A model generated the notes under the pieces. That model saw only the letters and a program-made list of their open reading frames with translations, was not told the origin of the DNA and ran no database searches. From Octopus sinensis (taxonomy: Eukaryota), in contig NC_043016.1 in assembly GCF_006345805.1 (NCBI RefSeq), positions 434,001 to 498,000 on the forward strand: a stretch of 64,000 bases of DNA, read 5' to 3'. This document shows positions 5,269 to 45,742 of the stretch, in pieces; the first letter of the stretch is position 1, and every line of letters begins with the position of its first letter. The translations under genes and the position numbers were made by a program.

Positions 5269-6274
5269 TTGCACATACCAGATGTACCAGACATATGTTG
5301 CACATACCAGATGTACCAGACATATGTTGCACATACCAGATGTACCAGACATATATGTTGCACATGCCAGATGTACCAAACATATGTTGCACATACCAGA
5401 TGTACCAGACATAGATGTTGCACATACCAGATGTACCAGACATATATGTTGAACATACCAGATGTACCAGACATATATGTTGCACATACCAGATATACCA
5501 GACATATATGTTGCACATACCAGATGTACCAAACATATGTTGCACATACCAGATGTACCAGACATAGATGTTGCACATACCAGATGTACCAGACATATAT
5601 GTTGCACATACCAGATGTACCAGACATATATGTTGCACATACCAGATATACCAGACATATATGTTGCACATACCAGATGTACCAGACATATATGTTGCAC
5701 ATACCAGATATACCAGACATATATGTTGCACATACCAGATGTACCAGACATATATGTTGCACATACCAGATATACCAGACATATATGTTGCACATACCAG
5801 ATGTACCAAACATATGTTGCACATACCAGATGTACCAGACATAATGTTGCACATACCAGATGTACCAGACATATATGTTGCACATACCAGATGTACCAGA
5901 CATATATGTTGCACATACCAGATTACCAGACATATATGTTGCACATACCAGATGTACCAGACATATATGTTGCACATACCAGATATACCAGACATATATG
6001 TTGCACATACAGATGTACCAGACATATATGTTGCACATACCAGATGTACCAGACATATATGTTGCACATACCAGATGTACCAAACATATGTTGCACATAC
6101 CAGATGTACCAGACATATATGTTGCACATACCAGATGTACCAAACATGTTGCACATACCAGATGTACCAGATATATATGTTGCACATACCAGATGTACCA
6201 GACATATATGTTGCACATACCAGATGTACCAAACATATGTTGCACATACCAGATGTACCAGACATAAATGTTGC
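5269..6274. repeat. Minisatellite with 29-31-bp units, consensus GTTGCACATACCAGATGTACCAGACATATAT, about 33 copies
   Basis: Direct inspection; variants include 2-bp deletions and gatgtacc/gatatacc and cagac/caaac changes. Confidence 0.97.
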
Positions 6275-6665
6275 CATTGTCATCAGTATCATCACCATCT
6301 TCGTCATCATAGACCATCATCATCATTGTCATTACCATCGTCGTTGACATTGTCTACGTTGTCATCATCATCATCATCATCATCATCAACATCAATAATT
6401 ATCATTGTCGTCATTGTCATCACAATAATCATCATCATCATTATCTTCACTACCACCACTGTCATCATCATCATCATCATTATCCTTACCATCACCATCA
6501 TCATCGTCGTTATTGTCGTCATCTTTGCAACCACCACTACCACCATCATCACCACCACCACCATCATCATCATCATCAGCACCATTGTTGACATCATCAT
6601 CATCCTTACCACCACCATCATCATCATCACCACCGTTGTTGACATCATCATCATCATCATCATTG
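6275..6665. repeat. Degenerate (CAT/CAC/CGT)n trinucleotide tract
   Basis: Direct inspection. Confidence 0.95.
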
Positions 6666-6977
6666 TCAGTGTCTTAACATCCACCTTTTCCCTTGCTTGC
6701 ATGGATCAGACGGAGGTCACTGAAGCAGATTTTATATGGCTGATTGACCCTTCCTCTTTTACTCTCCTTACTCGTTTCCAAATACGGGTAATATTTTCCC
6801 CATGACCGGCTGTATTCTCCATGGATGATTGGAAACGGAAACGAAACAAACTACTTCTATAATGGTGACACTTATTTACAATTATCCCATGATATTAAGA
6901 GCAGGAAGCTCAAACATGCATGCTTACATACATACATACACACAAACACATACATACATACAGAAATGCATACATAC

Positions 6978-7422
6978 ATTATTATGGCTTCCCCCTCGTT
7001 ATCGAGTATGGCCATTGCATGAAGCTTAACTGTTACTGGTGCAGTGATCGAATGTGACTTTTTAGACCAGCTAAAGATCTACAATGTCTTGTACAGAATT
7101 GGCAACTAAAACCTTTACCGTTAATAGCCAGCTGTAGTTGTAACTGGGCTTCATGTACCTTTGCATGTCGTTTAAGTCCTCCTGCCGAATTACACTCTCT
7201 TCCACATGCCCGACAGATATGATTAGTATGGTGTGTTACACCACCACCAGTGGCCAGGTTGTCACTCATCTGTCTCACTTTATGACTATGAAGATGGCTC
7301 TTGAGTCCAGCTTTACTGAGGCAGTGTTTGTGCAAGACACTGCATTTCAGCATCATAGGAAGACCCTTCCCATCTGGAAGTGCAACAGTGATACCCTTCC
7401 TGACATCCCTCCTTACTTCCTC
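6978..7422 (-). mobile_element. 5'-truncated RTE-like LINE 3' end encoding three C2H2-like zinc fingers, with (ATGT)n flanks
   Basis: Minus ORF ...HCLSKAGLKSHLHSH...CRACGRECNSAGGLKRHAKVH...CQFCTRHCRSLAGLKSHIRSLHQ*, a short 3' UTR, then (TATG)n. A near-identical copy is at 40156-40458. Confidence 0.7.
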
Positions 7423-7571
7423 ATACATACATACATACATACTACATATGCACATACACACATATATATGTACACACACATACAGACAGACAGACAGGCA
7501 AACATGCAAAAGTACCTTGTTGATGTCAAAATTCTGGTTCTTTCTCTATTGGCAAGAAGTCATGAAATAAT

Positions 7572-20247: not shown

Positions 20248-20411
20248 TAGGCGCAGGAGTGGCTGTGTGGTAGCAGTTTACTTACCAACCACATGGTTCT
20301 GGGTTCAGTCCCACTGCATAGCACCTTGGGCAAGTGTCTTCTACTATAGCCTCAGGCTGACCAAAGCCTTGTGAGTGGATTTGGTAGATGGAAACTGAAA
20401 GAAGCCTGTCG

Positions 20412-20444
<33 letters not shown>

Positions 20445-20950
20445 GTAGCCTCAGGCCGACCAAAGCCTTGTGAGTGGATTTTGTAGATGGAAACTGAAAG
20501 AAGCCTGTCGTATATATATATATATATATATATAGGTGCAGGAGTGACTGTGTGGTAAACAGCTTGCTTACCAACCACATAGTTCTTGGTTCAGTTCCAC
20601 TGCGTGGCACCTTGGGCAAGTGTCTTCTACTATAGCCTCGGGCTGACCAAGGCCTTGTGAGTGGATTTGGTAGATGGAAACTGAAAGAAGCCTGTCGTCT
20701 CTCTCTCTCTATATATATATATATATGTATGTGTGTGTATATTTTTGTGTGTCTGTGTTTGTCCCTCCAACATCGCTTGACAACCGATGGTGGTGTGTTT
20801 ACCACCCCCTAACTTGGCAGTTCGGCAAAATAGACCGATAGAATAAGTACAAAGCTTACAAAGAATAAGTCCTGGGGGTCGATTTGCTTGACTAAAGGCA
20901 GTGCTCCAGCATGGCAGCAGTCAAATGACTGAAACAAGTAAAAGAGTAAA
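20248..20950 (+). mobile_element. CORE-type SINE cluster with internal reiteration
   Basis: Block tagcctc.ggc.gaccaa.gccttgtgagtggattt.gtagatggaaactgaaagaagcctgtcgt occurs three times (near 20347, 20446, 20633), each followed by (CT)/(TA) repeats. Confidence 0.88.
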
Positions 20951-28110: not shown

Positions 28111-28469
28111 AGTCACAAAAACATCAATTTTTGTTGGAGGAAACCCAAACTTATTAAATAGGTACCAGTACATGAATGGTATTTTTTATCCTCTACCTGC
28201 CCCTGGTAAAAAAAAAAAAAAAAAGAAATAGGCCTCAGTAGGATTTGAACCTGGAATGAAAATTGACCTAACTTTTAAGTTAAATACAAAGCATTTTGTC
28301 CACTGCACTACATGTACAGAGATAGTATTTTTAACATAGAGCAAATGCTACATTTTAATGGAAAGGACACAGACAATAAAATAAACACCAGTAAATAACC
28401 GGTACATACTTGTGATCCTAGACAAATACAATATAAGGCAAATTTGGTAGGATTTAAAATCAGTATATA

Positions 28470-28828
28470 AATACCTATTTCTTTATGACCCACAAGGGGC
28501 TAAACACAGAGAGAACAAAAAAGGACAGACAAACGGATTAAGTCGATTATATCGACCCCAGTGTGTAACTGGTACATAGTTAATCGACCCCGAAAGGATG
28601 AAAGGCAAAGTCGGCCTCGGCGGAAATTGAACTCAGAACGTAACAGCAGACGAAATACCTATTTCTTTACTACCCACAACGGGCTAAACACAGAGAGGAC
28701 AAACAAGGACAGACAAACGGATTAAGTCAATTATATCGACCCCAGTGCGTAACTGGTACTTATTTAATCAACCCCGAAAGGATGAAAGGTAAAGTCAACC
28801 TCGGTGGAATTTGAACTCAGAACGTAAC
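28470..28828 (-). mobile_element. Family A SINE tandem dimer (period about 184 bp)
   Basis: atacctatttcttta at 28471 and 28655. Confidence 0.9.
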
Positions 28829-29145
28829 GGCAACAATTTTGGACACCTTTTTGAATTCCATATGTCTAACACTAATGGACATGCTTTTGAAAACATTCTT
28901 TCATGCTCAGAATTGCTGAAGTATGGAATAAACTACCTGCATCAGTTGTTAGCTGATAAGACAATACATCCTTCAAAACTTCCATTCTTCTTGAAATTCA
29001 TCAACACTACACCTGATGCCCCCACCCCTGCTACTTCTTCCTTTTTTTTTTTAGTGACTTATTCACAGTTCACTTCTTGTACATATTTTATGCAATGTTT
29101 GTGCAGTTTTGGTTACTTTTTCTGATGAGTTGTAGTGCACCTGAG

Positions 29146-31632: not shown

Positions 31633-31732
31633 NNNNNNNNNNNNNNNNNNNNNNNNNNNNNNNNNNNNNNNNNNNNNNNNNNNNNNNNNNNNNNNNNNNN
31701 NNNNNNNNNNNNNNNNNNNNNNNNNNNNNNNN
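31633..31732. other. Assembly gap (100 N)
   Basis: Run of exactly 100 n; true size unknown. Confidence 1.
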
Positions 31733-32375
31733 ATTTATAATGCCAAATATGCCGAAAAATTGGACATGTTGTCCATTACCATATATTCACAATACGCACG
31801 CTACTCGAAAAAAGGTCGACATAAATTTAACCGTTAAAGGTATTTTTTAATATGCTGGCCATTGATAAAGTTTTTTCGAAAAAAATTTATCCTACTTAGA
31901 TATAAATTTAAGCGTTCACTTCCAGACTATCTCAATCTGTGAGAGCCTCAGTTCAAATCGCACGTGTCTCGAATGGGCTAGAGTATTTCTATTTTGGATG
32001 TATTTGGGGTACTTGGCTGTGCTCATGACTTAGTGTTTGCTTCTTCCATGGGTATGAATAAGTATCTCATTTATTTCTTTTGCCACATGTATCACTGACG
32101 AAGAGAGGGCTCTTAGTAGCTAACTCTGAAATCGGTCCGATATGGTAATAATGGTATTTTAAAAAAATTTCTGTCGACCTTTTTTCGAGTAGCGTGCGTA
32201 TTGTGAAAAAATTATATGGTTAATGGACAATATGTCCAATTTTTCGGCATATTTGGCATTAGAAATGTTTTCCTTTGCCCTCATTTATGAATTGTTTATA
32301 AATTTAACCGTTCAAGGTATTTTTTAATATGCTGGCCATTGATACAGTTTTTTCGAAAAAAAATTTATCCTACAT
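31733..32375 (+). mobile_element. HHR-bearing ~477-bp direct-repeat element (retrozyme/Penelope pLTR-like), copy 1, with inverted 5' segment
   Basis: ataaatttaaccgtt recurs at 31821 and 32298 (period 477); 31733-31820 is the reverse complement of 32173-32266; one HHR per unit; no ORF. Confidence 0.75.
32081..32156 (+). ncRNA. Type I hammerhead ribozyme, catalytic core intact
   Basis: Stem I TATCA(32090-94)/TGGTA(32143-47), extended by TGCCA/TGGTA; core CTGACGA (32095-101); stem II AGAG/CTCT with inner GGCT/AGCT; GAAA (32128-31); stem III ATCG/CGAT; AUA cleavage triplet ending at 32142. Confidence 0.85.
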
Positions 32376-32382
32376 GATTATA

Positions 32383-32423
<41 letters not shown>

Positions 32424-32462
32424 TATATATATCTATATATATATATAATATATATATTATAT

Positions 32463-32502
<40 letters not shown>

Positions 32503-32507
<5 letters not shown>

Positions 32508-32843
32508 GAATGAAAGAATGGAGTCGAACGAAGATGTTAACAAAATTCCTTTACTCTGACATATGTTTCGAAGACGGCATGTTTTCATTCCAAAGGATAT
32601 AAAGTGCATTATGCAATCTTCTCATCAGAAGAGGGAGGCCCTCTCATGACAACAAGACAAACAAAAATTTCGATGATTGTTTGTCTTGTTGTCGAGAGAG
32701 GCTCCCTTTCTTTCCTGATGGGAAGATTGCATAATGCACCCTTTATTCCTTTGGAATGAAAACATGCTGTCTTCGAAACATATGTCGAGAGTAAAGGAAT
32801 TTTGTTAAAATCTTCGTTCGACTCCATTCTTTCATTTATTCAT
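32503..32843. mobile_element. Fold-back (fully palindromic) element of about 340 bp
   Basis: Left arm atgaatgaaagaatggagtcgaacgaag...gacaacaagacaaacaa pairs with right arm ttgtttgtcttgttgtc...cttcgttcgactccattctttcat; short spacer near 32666-32680. Confidence 0.9.
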
Positions 32844-33010
32844 ATACAACACACAAATTTCTGCACATGAACCCGGAGTTTCTACCCTGACAGGTCGCTT
32901 CAACCATGTTTCTGACGTGAATTTGCTACCCAGGTTTCGGTTAAACGAATTTTCCATGCTGGCGATAAACATAGGATAATTCATTCACCTACTTATATAT
33001 ATATATATAT

Positions 33011-36930: not shown

Positions 36931-37690
36931 TCTGTTCTACTATAAGCACAAGGCCCGAAATTTTGGGGGAAGGATAAGTCGATTAGATTGACCTCAGTAC
37001 TCAACTGGTACTTAATTTATTGATCCCTAAAGGATGAAATTCAAAGTCGACCTCGGCGGAATTTGAACTCAGAACACCCGGCGTATTAACGATTCTGTCA
37101 GTTCACCGCAACAACAACAACAACAACATTAATGGTTTCAAATTTTGGCACAAGGCCAGCAAATTCGGGGAGTATTAAATCGATAACATCAACTCCAGTG
37201 TTCAACTGCTACTTATTTCATCGACCCCGAAAGGATGAAAGGCAAAGTCGACCTCAGTGAATTTTAACAAGGAACGTAAAGACCGACGAAATACCTATTT
37301 CTATACTGCTCACAAGGGGCTAAACACAGAGAGGACAAACAAGGACAGACAAACGGATTAAGTCGGTTATATCGACCCCAGTGCGTAACTGGTACTTATT
37401 TAATCGACCCCGAAAGGATGAAAGGCAAAGTCGACCTTAGCGGAAATTGAACTCAGAACGTAATACAGACGAAATACCTATTTCTTTACTACCCAGAAGG
37501 GGCTAAACATAGAGGGGACAGACAAGGACAGACAAACGGATTAAGTCGATTATATCGACCCCAGTGCGTAACTGGTACTTATTTAATCGACCCCGAAAGG
37601 ATGAAAGTCAAAATCGACCTCAGCGGAAATTGAACTCAGAACGTAGCGACAGACGAAATTCCGCTAAGCATTTTGTCTGACGTACTAACA
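36920..37690 (-). mobile_element. Family A SINE cluster including a tandem multimer (period about 183 bp)
   Basis: gacgaaatacctatttct at 37285 and 37468, plus related copies at 36920-37270. Confidence 0.9.
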
Positions 37691-39241
37691 GAAGAAGCCA
37701 TATTAAAACCCAATAAATGAGTGTTTATAAAAAATACCAGTGGGGTGGGGAACTCTTATTTATTTATATTCTCACAGAAATAGGGTTCTTACTCAATCTT
37801 CCAATGTCTTCTATTGGCAAAATTGTCCTAAATCAACTTAATTTTTCATCAACCATATCGTTATAACGGTTCTACCAATTCGACGCCTTCAAAACACAAC
37901 AACAACAATAATAAAGAAGAAAAGAAAGAAAAGATGAAGGAAAAAAGTAGACAAGGTGGAAGAGGTTGGAAAGAAGAGAAGGAGAAAGTAGACAAACAAA
38001 CAAACAAAAAAGAAGGTTATTTATGCTTGTGGCTGGAACATAATTATGTGTCATTGGTGAGAGAAAAGAGAATGGCTACGGAAATTAAAACTTCTCGAAT
38101 GGCTTGATTTGTTTGCCTTTGGTTTATTTTCAGTAGCAACTTGTATAACTTACGAATCCCTAGTTTCATTCGCTACCATTTGTCTTCCGTGTGTCAATGT
38201 AATTCTAGTAATTGGTCAGTACTTATATTGTTGTCACTTTTCAGAAGGATAAAGTGCTAAGCTGATTTCGGCAGGATTTTCATCCAGAAAATAAAGGGCC
38301 GTGACTTAATTACGCAAATAATTTGACCGACGCTCTAGCATTCTTTCCGATCTAAAGGCTAGGTTTGGTGGTGTAGTTACACAGATTTAAGTGGCGCAAT
38401 CGTTCAGAGTTGACCATGCATTTGTACATGCGTATAGAAGTCTGTATAAGATTTTTTTGAGGAATGCTAGCATCGATTACAATCTAAGGAAATGGCTTCC
38501 ACCCTAGTACTAGTATCATCAACAACAATGCTGCCAAGACACAAAAAGTTGAGACAATACCTATTTCTTTATTACCCACAAGGGGCTAAACATAGAAGGG
38601 ACAAAAAAGTTTTTTATAACGCACTTTTGGGCAACCTTTCACATCCTGTCGACAAATGATATTTTGATTTGTATAAAAATGTCGGATATAAATGTTCTTA
38701 CTCAGCTTCTTTACTTTCTTCAAATATTGTTAATAATCACACACTTTTTTACCTATGGATTGGAGTCGTGAAACTGAGTTACGAAAATGAAGTGTCACAT
38801 GAATACCTACCTACCTACCTACCTACCTACCTACCTACCTACCTACATACATACATACCTACCTACCTACCTACATACCTACTTACCTATTTCTTTACTA
38901 CCCACAAGGGGCTAAACACAGAGAGGACAAACAAGGACAGACAAACGGATTAAGTCGATTATATCGACCCCAGTGCGTAACTGGTACTTAATTTATCGAC
39001 CCCGAAAGGATGACAGGCAAAGTCGATCTCGGCGGAATTTGAACTCAGAACGTAACGGCAGACGAAATACGGCTACGCATTTCGCCCGGCGTGCTAACGG
39101 TTCTGCCAGCTCGCTGCCTTTTACTTACCTACATACCTACCTACCTACCTACCAACCTACATACCTACCTACCTACCTACATACCTACCTGCCTGCCCGC
39201 CTACCTACCTCCATATATATATATATCCATACAAACATACA

Positions 39242-39285
<44 letters not shown>

Positions 39286-39476
39286 CATACATACATATAT
39301 ACGACGGGCTTCTTTCAGTTTCCTTCTACCAAATCCACTCACAAGGCTTTGGTCGGCCTGAGGCTATAGTAGAAGACACTTGCCCAAGGTTCCACACAGT
39401 TGGACTGAACCCACAACCATATGGTTGGTAAGTAAGCTACTTACCACACAGCCACTCCTACGCCTAATATACTTCT

Positions 39477-40080
39477 AATATAGGATAAAATTTATTTAAA
39501 AAATTTCATGAAGTGGCCAGCTTATTAAAATACGATTTAAAGTCTATTTCTCAGCATATTGGCATAGAAATTTTTTTTTTCTTTTGCCTTTATTTATAAT
39601 TGTTTATAGTTTTCACCTTTAAAGGTATTTTAATATACTGGCCACTTGATGAAATTTTTTGAAAAAAATTTTATCCTATATTAGAAGTAAATTCATTACC
39701 ATTTACTTCGGGACTGGTGACCAATCTAAGCTGTGGTTCCTGACCGATTACATGTGTGATAAGGCTCGCTACGGAATTTTTATATTTAGATATATTTGGG
39801 GTACTTCTGCTTTTTTTCCATGGGAGCCTGTAAGTACTTCATTTATTTCTTATCGTATTCTCTGCTGATGTGGGGAAAATCCGTTGGATTAATCCCGAAA
39901 TTGATTCAATATAGAGATAAAGTATTTAAAAAAATTCTGTTAGCTCGCTTTCCTCGATTTCAGCACGTCGTGTATTCATGGTTAATGTATAATGTATGTG
40001 GCGATTGACGATTTAAAGTCTATTTCTCAGCATATTGGCATAGAAATCTTTTTTCTTTTGCCCTTGTTTATAATTGTATA
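39477..40080 (+). mobile_element. HHR-bearing ~476-bp direct-repeat element, copy 2, with inverted 5' segment
   Basis: acgatttaaagtctatttctcagc recurs at 39532 and 40008 (period 476); 39477-39533 is the reverse complement of 39625-39682; collinear homology to copy 1 (atttggggtactt, ttccatggg, catttatttctt). Confidence 0.75.
39859..39917 (+). ncRNA. Type I hammerhead ribozyme, homolog of the 32081 motif, with core A9 changed to T
   Basis: Stem I TCTCTG/TAGAGA; core CTGATGT; stem II GGGG/TCCC plus AATCC/GGATT; GAAA (39897-900); stem III ATTG/CAAT; AUA triplet ending at 39911. Confidence 0.8.
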
Positions 40081-40120
40081 TACATACATACATACATACA
40101 TACATACATACATACATACA

Positions 40121-40155
<35 letters not shown>

Positions 40156-40156
<1 letters not shown>

Positions 40157-40458
40157 TTATGGCTTCCCCCTCGTTATCGCGTATGGCCATTGCACGAAGC
40201 TTAACCGTTACTGGTGCTGTGATCGAATGTGACTTTTTAGCCCAGCTAAAGATCTACAATGTCTTGTACAGAATTGGCAGCTAAAACCTTTACCGGTAAT
40301 AACCGTCTGTAGTTGTAACTGGGCTTCATGTACCTTTGCATGTCGTTTAAGTCCTCCTGCCGAATTACACTCTCTTCCAGATGCCCGACAGATATGATTA
40401 GTATGGTGTGTTACACTACCACCAGTGGCCAGGTTGTCACTCATCTGTCTCGCTTTAT
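40156..40458 (-). mobile_element. Second, more truncated copy of the zinc-finger RTE-like LINE 3' end
   Basis: Collinear with 6978-7277; translates MSDNLATGGSVTHHTNHICRASGRECNSAGGLKRHAKVH...CQFCTRHCRSLAGLKSHIRSQHQ*; tail runs into (TACA)n at 40080-40150. Confidence 0.75.
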
Positions 40459-40550
40459 GTATATTGTATATGTGTATGTGTGGATATATAGATATATGTA
40501 TATATGTATATATGTATGTTTTTGTCTGTGTGTGTATGTTTGTGTGTGTG

Positions 40551-44896: not shown

Positions 44897-45599
44897 TAAT
44901 AATAATAATAATAATAATACAAGGACCACACAATCATTTAATGATATGTTATACTAAACATAATTAATTAGGTACAGCTCGCATAATTATCAATAATTCT
45001 GCGCTGTCTAACATCTATCCATGCCGATCCTGTTACTATTAATTTATTTTCACCCTTAAACCCTTTCTCTCCTCCAAATCTAACATTGATCTAATAATTA
45101 CCTACCAGCAAAGTCAATTTGCGTTAAAGAGTTCATGTTGATAACCATATTAAATTCGCAATCCCTATAGATATACACAGTTCGCTTCAAACGCCATCCA
45201 TTACATCTAACTAATTGATACTTCTCAACATCTGCATCTGATATCTTCAGAGCACATTCTTATAATTAAGCTAAGTACAGCCAGCCCACACTCGCGAGCG
45301 ACCATGGTTTGGTAACATGTACCGTGTTTTGGTTAATTATTGTAGGTGCCTGTTTAGTCGCGAGCACATATAGACACATTTTTGTACTTTCACTTTTGAC
45401 TAACAGGTACATTTAAGCGAGTGACACCAGGTGAGAGAGAGAGGGAGGGGAGAGAAGACAGAGAGAAAGGGAGAGAGAAGAGGAGAGAGAAGAGGAGAGA
45501 CAAAGGAAGAAGGAGAGAGAGAGAAATATATATATAGGAAGCCATGATAGATCGTTAGTTCCTACACGCATTTTTTCTCTCCTTGTTTTTTTCTGTGTA

Positions 45600-45636
45600 T
45601 CTTTCTGTCGAGAGCGTAGGCTCGAAACGTAAAAGA
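45600..45636 (+). ncRNA. Minimal Penelope-type hammerhead-like motif with A6 changed to T
   Basis: TCTTT-CTGTCGA-GAGC-gtag-GCTC-GAAAC-GTA-AAAGA: 5-bp stem I, 4-bp stem II, GUA triplet. Confidence 0.7.
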
Positions 45637-45742
45637 CTTTTTCTATTTCTATTCCTGAGCGCTATACTATACATTTGTTTGTTTGTACTCCACTGCCTTC
45701 GTCTTTTGTATTTTCGTAAACTTTCCTGTTATATATTTATAT

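What the first reader, a model, noticed from the sequence alone, without database searches (positions are those of the whole stretch)
31821..32375. Retrozyme-like ~476-nt non-coding repeat carrying an intact type I hammerhead ribozyme
Seen: a 477-bp head-to-tail partial tandem (about 1.15 units) with no ORF, containing a complete HHR: TATCA-CTGACGA-AGAG..CTCT-GAAA-TCG.gtc.CGAT-A-TGGTA, with a bulged stem I extension and predicted cleavage after 32142 (AUA). The diverged copy at 39477-40080 has period 476 and all three stems changed in sequence but still paired (I TATCA/TGGTA vs TCTCTG/TAGAGA; II AGAG/CTCT vs GGGG/TCCC; III ATCG/CGAT vs ATTG/CAAT). Known: metazoan non-LTR retrozymes are tandem repeats of a few hundred nt with one type I HHR per unit that yield circular RNAs, and Penelope pLTRs also carry HHRs. 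Inference: a cephalopod retrozyme family, not known to me as described, predicting ~476-nt linear and circular RNAs from multimeric loci. This locus has one HHR, so it is probably an inserted copy rather than a source.
Basis: partly seen in the sequence, partly recalled or inferred. Interest (0 to 1): 0.92.

Follow-up and report, generated by a model that had tools for sequence, protein, structure and literature searches.

The report
Octopus retrozyme with hammerhead ribozyme
Two diverged copies of a ~476-base non-coding mobile element in an octopus genome carry a self-cleaving hammerhead RNA motif whose base pairs are kept by compensating mutations. It is a real new member of the known "retrozyme"/Penelope-derived retroelement class, not a new kind of system.

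Summary
There is a 477-bp partial tandem at 31821-32375 and a homologous locus at 39461-40084 with period 476. Each has no credible ORF and one type I hammerhead (HHR) motif.

The two units are only 66% identical. Even so, all 17 HHR base pairs pair in both, and 9 are changed on both sides. A strict HHR descriptor hits 0 of 200 shuffles.

- Copy 2 has a core mutation (A9 to U).
- Copy 1 has A-U instead of the usual G10.1-C11.1.
- No Rfam hammerhead model matches either copy.
- Each locus also carries an inverted partial copy placed head-to-head, and each ends in a microsatellite.

That layout (partial tandem, inverted 5'-truncated copy, (TA)n-type target) is the insertion signature of Penelope-like elements. 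No RT or GIY-YIG ORF lies within about 4 kb (copy 1, left) to 8 kb on either side. The best reading is single-HHR ("monomer") insertions of a non-autonomous, PLE-mobilised retrozyme family.

The host is Octopus (92% protein match to O. vulgaris). Unrelated HHR elements with matching layouts lie next door (32499-32846) and in an O. vulgaris locus.

Not shown: self-cleavage, circular RNA, and loci with two or more HHRs. This is a new member of a known kind, of moderate interest.

The parts
31733..31828 (-). Locus 1: inverted, 5'-truncated partial copy (reverse complement of unit segment 32165-32266). It sits head-to-head with the full unit. Its far end is cut by the assembly gap 31633-31732. An 8-nt overlap A(T/G)AAATTT lies at the junction with the unit.
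   Evidence: I5, I6: 94-96% complementary; 102 nt, 91%
31821..32297 (+). Locus 1: one full 477-nt unit, non-coding, GC 0.34
   Evidence: folds below shuffles (z -2.6 linear, -2.8 circular)
32082..32155 (+). Type I hammerhead motif of copy 1. Minimal motif 32090-32147. Core C3-A9 = 32095-32101. G12-A14 = 32128-32130. Predicted cleavage between A32142 and T32143. A possible helix I extension pairs GCCA 32082-32085 with TGGT 32152-32155 across a 4x4 internal loop.
   Evidence: 81 bits with own model R1. No Rfam hit.
32298..32375 (+). Locus 1: partial second unit (first ~78 nt of the unit), running into (TA)n at 32376-32498
39461..39533 (-). Locus 2: inverted partial copy (reverse complement of unit segment 39620-39693, ~88%). 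A SINE-like repeat abuts it on the left.
39532..39608 (+). Locus 2: upstream partial unit (last ~77 nt of the unit), 92% identical to 40008-40082
39609..40084 (+). Locus 2: one full 476-nt unit, GC 0.33, 66% identical to the locus 1 unit, ending at (CATA)n 40085-40150
   Evidence: fold z -3.8
39859..39917 (+). Hammerhead motif of copy 2: TCTCTG / CTGATGT (position 9 = T39871, core mutation) / GGGG..TCCC / GAAA / TTG-att-CAA / TA / TAGAGA. The cleavage-site equivalent is after A39911.
   Evidence: 79 bits with R1. No Rfam hit.

Best explanation
These are two old, independently inserted, single-ribozyme copies of one family of ~476-nt non-autonomous retroelements in an Octopus genome. The family belongs to the metazoan non-LTR retrozymes, that is, non-coding derivatives of Penelope-like elements (PLEs).

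**Shown.**
- The unit is non-coding, AT-rich and predicted to be strongly self-paired.
- It contains a type I hammerhead whose three helices were kept by compensatory substitutions while the rest of the unit drifted to 66% identity.
- Each locus is 1.16 units in tandem plus an inverted truncated copy placed head-to-head, and each ends in a microsatellite.

**Inferred mechanism.**
1. At source loci with two or more units, read-through transcripts self-cleave at the hammerhead (in copy 1 coordinates, after A32142). [quoted passage not shown]
2. A host tRNA-ligase-type enzyme can circularise the monomers.
3. A PLE reverse transcriptase/GIY-YIG endonuclease supplied in trans nicks a (TA)n-like microsatellite.
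4. It primes cDNA synthesis on UA-rich tracts of the multimeric or circular RNA and copies slightly more than one unit.
5. By template switching it adds the inverted truncated copy.

With one ribozyme each, the two loci here can be cut at most once if transcribed, and they cannot yield circles. Copy 2's ribozyme is probably dead (A9 to U). Copy 1's has a complete core but an unusual A10.1-U11.1 pair, so its activity is uncertain.
For: **The motif is real.**
- Strict descriptor: 1 hit in the window, 0 in 200 shuffles.
- 17/17 pairs form in both copies. Nine pairs are changed on both sides, against 0-2 in slid controls. Only 1 of 500 shuffles equals the observed values.
- The HHR region is no more conserved in sequence (42-55%) than the rest of the unit.

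**It is a family with a fixed unit.**
- The periods are 477 and 476 in two loci that are 66% identical and collinear across the unit-to-unit junction.

**It is non-coding and non-autonomous.**
- ORFs are 41 aa or shorter (locus 1) and 70 aa or shorter (locus 2), with no Pfam match or homologue.
- No RT or GIY-YIG domain lies in 27.5-44.5 kb.
- There is no tRNA-like part.

**It fits retrozyme traits.**
- GC is 0.33-0.34.
- Units fold better than shuffles, z -2.6 to -3.8, with 62-70% of bases paired as circles.
- These match the traits in PMC7229834. Unit length lies within the 51-972 bp range, and monomer copies are common, in 10.64898/2026.07.22.740005.

**The insertion signature is PLE-type.**
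- The signature is a partial tandem, an inverted 5'-truncated copy and a microsatellite target, as in PMC8557442 Fig. 2 and text.
- It is seen at locus 1 and locus 2.
- An unrelated 430-nt HHR element in O. vulgaris has the same layout, flanked on both sides by (TA)n.

**Context.**
- HHR-like motifs are strongly enriched in this DNA: 4 in the window against 0.03 expected, and 1 in L001 against 0.05.
- AUA is a natural cleavage triplet (PMC1636495 abstract).
Against: - No Rfam hammerhead family matches either copy, at gathering score or at E<=10 on 81-nt slices.
- The 'highly conserved G10.1-C11.1' pair (PMC4209133) is A-U in copy 1. A9 is U in copy 2.
- The hammerhead fold is not the nearest-neighbour minimum-energy fold (-8.1 vs -14.6 and -7.7 vs -15.7 kcal/mol).
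- Only two copies could be studied. No locus with two or more HHRs was seen, there are no RNA data, and no autonomous PLE from this genome was available for comparison.
- No further copies could be fetched.
- The covariation rests on two sequences, so it shows maintenance of the pairs, not activity.
Confidence: 0.75

Rival explanations
1. The unit is the terminal repeat (pLTR / 3' end) of an autonomous Penelope-like element. The two loci would then be heavily 5'-truncated PLE insertions rather than copies of a dedicated short non-autonomous element.
For: The insertion layout is exactly that of PLEs (PMC8557442). PLE pLTRs carry type I HHRs, and most genomic PLE-HHRs are solitary remnants of truncated PLEs (PMC4209133). 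In Xenopus, retrozymes are sister to PLE pLTRs.
Against: Independent 5' truncations would give different tandem periods. Here two loci at 66% identity share a 476/477-nt period and are collinear across the unit junction. No RT/GIY-YIG domain is present near either copy. The HHR has a stable 4-bp helix III, unlike the minimal dimer-type PLE HHRs.
Confidence: 0.15
2. It is a relic family. The hammerhead fold was once selected, but the family is extinct, neither copy cleaves, and no RNA product exists today.
For: Intra-locus repeats have diverged 4-12%. Copy 2 has U9, copy 1 has A10.1-U11.1, there is no Rfam match, and the HHR fold is not the MFE.
Against: Copy 1 keeps every invariant core base and all 17 pairs. 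A10.1-U11.1 recurs in the unrelated O. vulgaris element, whose 48-nt inverted arms are 100% identical, which suggests a recent insertion. This rival concerns present activity only. It does not change what the element is.
Confidence: 0.3
3. It is a local DNA-level duplication or an interspersed satellite fragment, and the hammerhead-like motif is a coincidence.
For: The window is extremely rich in microsatellites and tandem repeats. Both loci lie next to microsatellites. Rfam is silent.
Against: There are 0/200 shuffles with such a motif. Nine double compensatory changes occur with no broken pair. The same motif sits at the homologous place in both copies. The recurring inverted-copy layout is also seen in an unrelated element on another chromosome.
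Confidence: 0.03
4. It is a DNA transposon of the MITE type, with the ~95-nt inverted repeats as its terminal inverted repeats.
For: Arms 31733-31828 and 32165-32266 are 91-96% complementary.
Against: The right arm is internal to the unit, not terminal. A different part of the unit is inverted in locus 2 and in L001. The direct partial tandem extends beyond the arms. No target-site duplication is evident.
Confidence: 0.02

Closest known systems
Metazoan non-LTR retrozymes (Cervera & de la Pena 2020, PMC7229834), e.g. the ~350-390-bp Mytilus galloprovincialis family
   Same: A short, non-coding, low-GC unit with one type I HHR per unit. It has a head-to-tail arrangement, strongly self-paired RNA and a mollusc host. 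The mussel HHRs also lack the canonical loop 1-loop 2 signature.
   Different: The unit is longer (476-477 nt against the 150-450 quoted there, but within the 51-972 bp of the 2026 preprint). Only 1.16 units and one HHR were seen per locus. Helix III is a stable 4-bp stem with a triloop. Helix II is extended by an internal loop and a second stem. The 10.1-11.1 pair is A-U in copy 1. RNA circles were not tested.
Penelope-like elements and their pLTR hammerheads (PMC4209133; PMC8557442)
   Same: The same features are the partial tandem, the inverted 5'-truncated copy adjacent to it, the microsatellite ((TA)n) target, and a type I HHR near the 3' part of the unit.
   Different: There is no RT/GIY-YIG ORF. 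The repeat period is 476-477 nt. The HHR is not of the minimal dimer type (no palindromic 15.2-16.2/loop 3). There is no extra nucleotide between 9 and 10.1.
Vertebrate retrozyme 'monomer derivatives' (10.64898/2026.07.22.740005)
   Same: Dispersed single-unit copies are interpreted as non-transposing offspring of multimeric sources. The family is viewed as a non-autonomous derivative of PLEs.
   Different: That study covers vertebrates plus a few insects and a coral. It has no cephalopod data, and the insertion-site layout is not described there.
HHR-bearing satellite and SINE-like repeats (newt satellite 2, Schistosoma Sm-alpha, Dolichopoda pDo500; PMC2837043)
   Same: These are repeats of a few hundred bp (pDo500 ~500 bp) with one type I HHR per unit. 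Compensatory changes occur in the stems, including at 10.1-11.1.
   Different: Those occur as long arrays or very high-copy SINE-like elements with demonstrated cleavage. Here only two dispersed copies of just over one unit each are known, and no activity data exist.

Membership tests
Hammerhead ribozyme, type I | Invariant core C3 U4 G5 A6 N7 G8 A9 ... G12 A13 A14 | tested here: met
   Copy 1: CTGACGA 32095-32101 and GAA 32128-32130. Copy 2 fails at one position (U9, T39871).
Hammerhead ribozyme, type I | A15.1-U16.1 pair and a non-G residue at the cleavage site (N-U-H) | tested here: met
   A32131-T32141 and A32142 (AUA). Copy 2: A39900-T39910 and A39911. AUA occurs in natural HHRs (PMC1636495).
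Hammerhead ribozyme, type I | Three helices around the core, with helices II and III closed by loops and helix I open, supported by covariation | tested here: met
   17 pairs, 100% paired in both copies, 9 changed on both sides. Slid controls give 30-42% paired. Only two sequences are available.
Hammerhead ribozyme, type I | G10.1-C11.1 closing pair of helix II (highly conserved, not absolute) | tested here: not met
   Copy 1 has A32102-T32127. Copy 2 has G-C. The unrelated O. vulgaris motif also has A-U.
Hammerhead ribozyme, type I | Match to a curated Rfam hammerhead covariance model | tested here: not met
   There is no hammerhead hit at gathering score over the window. There is none at E<=10 on 701-nt or 81-nt slices.
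Hammerhead ribozyme, type I | Loop 1-loop 2 tertiary contact | tested here: inconclusive
   The geometry is plausible: an internal loop follows 5 bp of helix I (copy 1) and 4 bp of helix II (both copies). The helix I extension is not evident in copy 2.
Hammerhead ribozyme, type I | Site-specific self-cleavage | not testable with these tools
   Needs in vitro transcription or RNA end mapping.
Metazoan non-LTR retrozyme | Short non-coding unit (about 150-450 bp; 51-972 bp in the 2026 survey) without LTR/PBS/PPT or ORF | tested here: met
   Units are 477 and 476 nt. ORFs are 41 aa or shorter and 70 aa or shorter, with no Pfam or homologue. PBS/PPT were not searched specifically.
Metazoan non-LTR retrozyme | Head-to-tail tandem copies with two or more HHRs (dimers to multimers) | tested here: not met
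   Both loci hold 1.16 units and one HHR. The family's other loci could not be reached.
Metazoan non-LTR retrozyme | Low GC content (<45-50%) | tested here: met
   GC is 0.344 and 0.330.
Metazoan non-LTR retrozyme | Highly self-paired monomer RNA | tested here: met
   z is -2.6/-3.8 (linear) and -2.8/-3.75 (circular). 62-70% of bases are paired. This is prediction only.
Metazoan non-LTR retrozyme | Expression as linear and circular RNAs of unit length | not testable with these tools
   No RNA data are available here.
Metazoan non-LTR retrozyme | Co-occurrence with autonomous PLEs in the same genome | not tested
   Literature only. PLEs are reported in cephalopods (PMC8557442, PMC6962438). PLE-type HHR relics are seen in the window, but no PLE ORF was found in it.
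Penelope-like element (autonomous) | ORF with RT and GIY-YIG endonuclease between the repeats | tested here: not met
   There is no RT or GIY-YIG domain in ORF segments >=50 aa of 27.5-44.5 kb. None is evident among ORFs >=110 aa window-wide.
Penelope-like element (insertion mode) | Partial tandem, an inverted 5'-truncated copy next to it, and a microsatellite target | tested here: met
   Locus 1 and locus 2. Flanks are (TG)n/(TA)n and (CATA)n. Compare PMC8557442.

The most novel reading that the evidence does not exclude
Octopus genomes may hold many distinct families of hammerhead-bearing, PLE-mobilised non-coding elements at high density. About five motifs were seen in 98 kb here. They use a hammerhead variant that current Rfam models miss: an extended helix II with a purine internal loop, often A10.1-U11.1, and a stable helix III. 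If multimeric source loci are transcribed, these elements would be a large, so far unannotated source of ribozyme-made circular RNAs in cephalopod tissues. Their insertion sites would give direct structural proof that retrozymes are integrated by the Penelope machinery at (TA)n microsatellites.
Probability: 0.3. Interest if true: 0.55.

Novelty: new member of a known kind. Interest (0 to 1): 0.36.

Why it matters
- It adds cephalopods to the animals that carry retrozyme-type elements.
- It gives a clean two-copy case of compensatory evolution in all helices of a natural hammerhead.
- It shows that curated covariance models miss this variant, so genome annotations of cephalopods probably undercount hammerheads.
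- The insertion anatomy is a partial tandem, a head-to-head inverted copy and a (TA)n-like target. It recurs in an unrelated family on an O. vulgaris chromosome. This is independent, site-level support for the recent proposal that animal retrozymes are non-autonomous Penelope-like elements.
- It is not a new kind of system.

Tried and rejected
1. **Rfam.** There was no hammerhead hit at any threshold. I therefore used my own descriptor and a covariance model, R1.
2. **Fetching more family members.** All attempts failed:
   - Two conserved-block patterns against viral and metagenome contigs found 0 hits.
   - A 70-aa pseudo-ORF of copy 2 had no candidates in the protein collection.
   - A repeat-derived ORF, meant to sample more Octopus DNA, had no candidates.
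   - An exact look-up of a window ORF was not on record.
   - Only one extra Octopus locus (L001, 34 kb) was obtained, via P0001. It holds no copy of this family.
3. **R1 over the whole window with filters off.** Only the two known copies score. The next hit is 13 bits.
4. **tRNA-derived SINE idea.** No tRNA-like sequence was found.
5. **MITE/TIR idea.** Rejected because the inverted segment is internal and differs between loci.
6. **A second ribozyme of opposite polarity in the unit.** None was found on either strand.
7. **Thermodynamic support for the HHR fold.** The fold is not the MFE. That is common for hammerheads and was not taken as decisive.
8. **Pfam coverage.** I did not scan the remaining ~47 kb of the window. 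By eye, only LINE-type C-terminal remnants were seen.

Full report
**1. The observation**

A direct repeat, 31821-31888 / 32298-32365, is 96% identical at a spacing of 477 bp. BLAST extends it to 76 nt. The plus-strand block 31821-32375 is therefore 1.16 units.

Inside the unit, the sequence from 32090 to 32147 spells a complete type I hammerhead:
- Helix I: TATCA pairs with TGGTA.
- Core: CTGACGA.
- Helix II: AGAG...CTCT.
- GAAA follows helix II.
- Helix III: ATCG-gtc-CGAT.
- A17 is A32142.

The second locus has a period of 476 (39532-39608 = 40008-40082, 92%). It is homologous to the first over the whole unit, at 66% identity over ungapped columns. BLAST and my covariance model find no further copy in the window.

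**2. Is the hammerhead more than chance?**

A strict descriptor requires an exact core, helix I of at least 5 bp, and helices II and III of at least 4 bp. It hits once in the window on both strands and never in 200 dinucleotide-preserving shuffles. A loose descriptor is expected 0.025 times per window.

The stronger argument is comparative. I aligned the two motifs (A3). All 17 pairs of the shared fold form in both copies. Nine pairs differ on both sides, four differ on one side, and none is broken. With the 3' partners slid by 1-3 columns, only 30-42% of cells pair and 0-2 pairs change on both sides. One of 500 column shuffles reaches the observed values.

Sequence identity in the motif (42-55%) is no higher than in the rest of the unit. 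The pairs have been kept, not the letters. With two sequences this shows that the fold was maintained during the family's diversification. It does not show present activity.

**3.

1. Copy 2's core is CTGATGT. Position 9 is U (T39871), and A9 is an invariant core residue.
2. Copy 1's helix II closes with A10.1-U11.1, not G-C. Cervera and de la Pena call G-C 'highly conserved' (PMC4209133). Compensatory variants at that pair do occur in natural families (PMC2837043).
3. Helix II is longer than stated. After 4 bp comes an AG/AA (AA/AA in copy 2) internal loop and a second 4-bp stem, three of whose pairs are changed on both sides.
4. No Rfam hammerhead model matches either copy. This holds at gathering score and at E<=10 on a 701-nt slice and on 81-nt slices.
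5. In nearest-neighbour terms the hammerhead fold is not the minimum-energy fold (-8.1 vs -14.6 and -7.7 vs -15.7 kcal/mol). The alternative folds differ between the copies, so the hammerhead is the only shared structure.
6. The helix I extension (GCCA 32082-32085 with TGGT 32152-32155 across a 4x4 loop) is plausible in copy 1 but not evident in copy 2.

**4. Anatomy of the loci**

Locus 1:
- Segment 31733-31828 is the reverse complement of 32165-32266 (91-96%).
- It sits head-to-head against the start of the unit, with an overlap A(T/G)AAATTT.
- Its far end is cut by a 100-N assembly gap (31633-31732), beyond which lies (TG)n.
- On the right the partial second unit runs into (TA)n.

Locus 2:
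- Segment 39461-39533 is an inverted copy of the unit's first part (39620-39693, about 88%).
- It is followed by the last 77 nt of a unit, then a full unit, then (CATA)n.

In both loci the 3' end of the plus-strand block falls where the unit itself is UA-rich, next to the microsatellite.

This combination is a partial tandem, an inverted 5'-truncated copy adjacent to it, and a microsatellite target. It is the arrangement described for Penelope-like elements. Those authors also note that such insertions break short-read assemblies (PMC8557442).

**5. Coding capacity and neighbours**

- Real ORFs in locus 1 are 41 aa or shorter. The longer ones listed run through the N gap.
- Locus 2 has 69- and 70-aa ORFs. 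They have no homologue and no Pfam match.
- ORF segments of at least 50 aa from 27.5-44.5 kb contain no reverse transcriptase or GIY-YIG domain, only a zinc-finger fragment.
- There is no tRNA-like sequence in the window.
- The units have GC 0.34 and 0.33.
- They fold more stably than shuffles, both as linear molecules (z -2.6, -3.8) and as circles opened at the cleavage site (z -2.8, -3.75; 62-70% paired).

**6. Host and context**

A zinc-finger ORF in the window is 92% identical to an Octopus vulgaris protein, so the window is from Octopus or a close relative. Through that protein I fetched 34 kb of O. vulgaris chromosome OX597815.1 (L001).

L001 contains no copy of this family. It does contain an unrelated element with the same architecture (L001 5398-5995, sense on the minus strand):
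- (TA)n on both sides;
- a 48-nt inverted piece, 100% complementary to an internal segment;
- a 430-nt unit and a 121-nt partial second unit (93%);
- a hammerhead-like motif with CUGAUGA, again A10.1-U11.1, a long helix II and a palindromic CCGG in place of helix III. Its first helix I pair (G-G) is mismatched.
- As a circle its unit folds at z -5.3.

In the window itself there are two more cases. A 348-bp palindrome (32499-32846) carries PLE-type hammerheads on opposite strands. A minimal hammerhead with one core change lies at 45598-45638 near (TA)n.

A relaxed descriptor finds 4 motifs in the window against 0.03 expected, and 1 in L001 against 0.05.

**7. Most likely mechanism**

The shown parts are the fold, the fixed unit length in two diverged loci, the non-coding nature and the insertion layout.

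The inferred parts follow the published retrozyme/PLE model (PMC7229834; PMC4209133):
1. Transcripts of multimeric source loci are cut by the hammerhead into unit-length RNAs.
2. These RNAs are circularised by a host ligase.
3. They are copied by a PLE reverse transcriptase after the GIY-YIG nuclease nicks a microsatellite.
4. Synthesis runs for slightly more than a unit, and template switching gives the inverted copy.

The stable 4-bp helix III suggests a ribozyme that works as a monomer. The dimer-dependent minimal PLE and amphibian motifs do not.

The two loci studied have one ribozyme each. They are dead-end 'monomer' insertions of the type that the 2026 survey finds dispersed along chromosomes.

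**8. Rivals**

- **A pLTR or 3' fragment of an autonomous PLE.** This is the main rival. Against it, random 5' truncations would not give the same 476/477-nt period in two loci, and no ORF is attached. Without a genome-wide census I cannot exclude that the unit derives from, or is still shared with, an autonomous element's terminus.
- **An extinct family.** That the family is extinct and both ribozymes are inactive is quite possible. It does not change the classification.
- **Chance, local duplication or a MITE.** These are disfavoured by the shuffles, by the covariation, and by the fact that different internal segments are inverted in different loci.

**9. Comparison with what is known, and novelty**

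The element meets the sequence-level criteria of metazoan non-LTR retrozymes, with two exceptions. The multimeric arrangement was not seen at these loci, and RNA circles could not be tested. It does not meet the curated Rfam hammerhead models or the G10.1-C11.1 rule in copy 1.

In the searchable literature I found no description of a cephalopod retrozyme. Several related facts are already on record:
- Molluscan retrozymes are known (mussel, PMC7229834).
- PLEs are reported in cephalopods (PMC8557442, PMC6962438).
- A squid genome paper lists 235 Rfam hammerhead_1 hits.

I therefore class it as a new member of a known kind, with some value for ribozyme annotation and for the retrozyme-PLE link.

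**10. Limits**

- The analysis rests on two copies plus one extra 34-kb locus.
- There are no RNA data, no biochemical test and no access to the rest of the genome.
- All attempts to retrieve more copies failed.

Noticed in passing
window 32499-32846: A 348-bp near-perfect palindrome (arms ~88% identical) lies directly after the (TA)n that ends locus 1. Each arm carries, pointing outward, a PLE-type hammerhead: CUGAUGA / GAAGAU...GUCUUC (long helix II) / GAAA / CAUAUG (palindromic) / UC. The left arm (minus strand, C3 = 32628) has an intact core but a 1-nt deletion in helix I. The right arm (C3 = 32715) has a perfect 5-bp helix I but A9 changed to G. It looks like a head-to-head pair of 5'-truncated PLE-type copies. 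Rfam gives only sub-threshold hairpin (miRNA-like) hits.
   Followed up: partly
L001 5398-5995 (Octopus vulgaris OX597815.1, about 81.025 Mb), sense on the minus strand: An unrelated 430-nt unit has the same layout as locus 1: (TA)n, a 48-nt inverted piece, a full unit, a 121-nt partial unit, (TA)n. Its hammerhead-like motif again has A10.1-U11.1, with CCGG instead of helix III. The inverted arms are 100% identical, whereas the direct repeats are only 93% identical, which is odd if both arose in one insertion event.
   Followed up: partly
window 45598-45638: A minimal hammerhead-like motif, UCUUU / CUGUCGA (A6 changed to U) / GAGC-GUAG-GCUC / GAAA-CG-UA / AAAGA, sits in a ~200-bp piece between (GA)n-like sequence and (TA)n. 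It is probably the 3' stub of a truncated PLE-type element.
   Followed up: partly
window 31633-31732: A 100-N assembly gap directly abuts the inverted arm of locus 1. The true extent of the inverted copy, and the left target site, are unknown. Inverted/tandem PLE-type insertions are known to break assemblies (PMC8557442).
   Followed up: no
window 31821-31916 and 39609-39700: The first ~95 nt of the unit is its best conserved part (75-80% identity against 35-60% elsewhere). It contains a T6-CG-A7 palindrome (31870-31886). It may be a promoter or a recognition site for the reverse transcriptase.
   Followed up: no
window 6925-7508 and 40091-40459: Two copies of a C2H2 zinc-finger-coding fragment are present (89.8% and 94.3% identical at DNA level to L001 9759-10352; the 7033-7509 copy's ORF is 92% identical to an O. 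vulgaris protein). The more distant protein hits look like C-terminal parts of LINE ORFs. One copy lies just right of locus 2.
   Followed up: partly
window 5269-6274: A long tandem array has a 31-bp unit (33 copies, 93% matches; higher-order period 153), followed by a (TCA)n tract at 6362-6663.
   Followed up: no
window, many sites (e.g. 28469-28832, 37130-37675, 38884-39114, 39300-39455, 20347-20534): At least two very abundant SINE-like repeats occur, with more than 15 copies in 64 kb, and they are shared with L001 at 85-96% identity. ARAGORN finds no tRNA-like head in the window.
   Followed up: no
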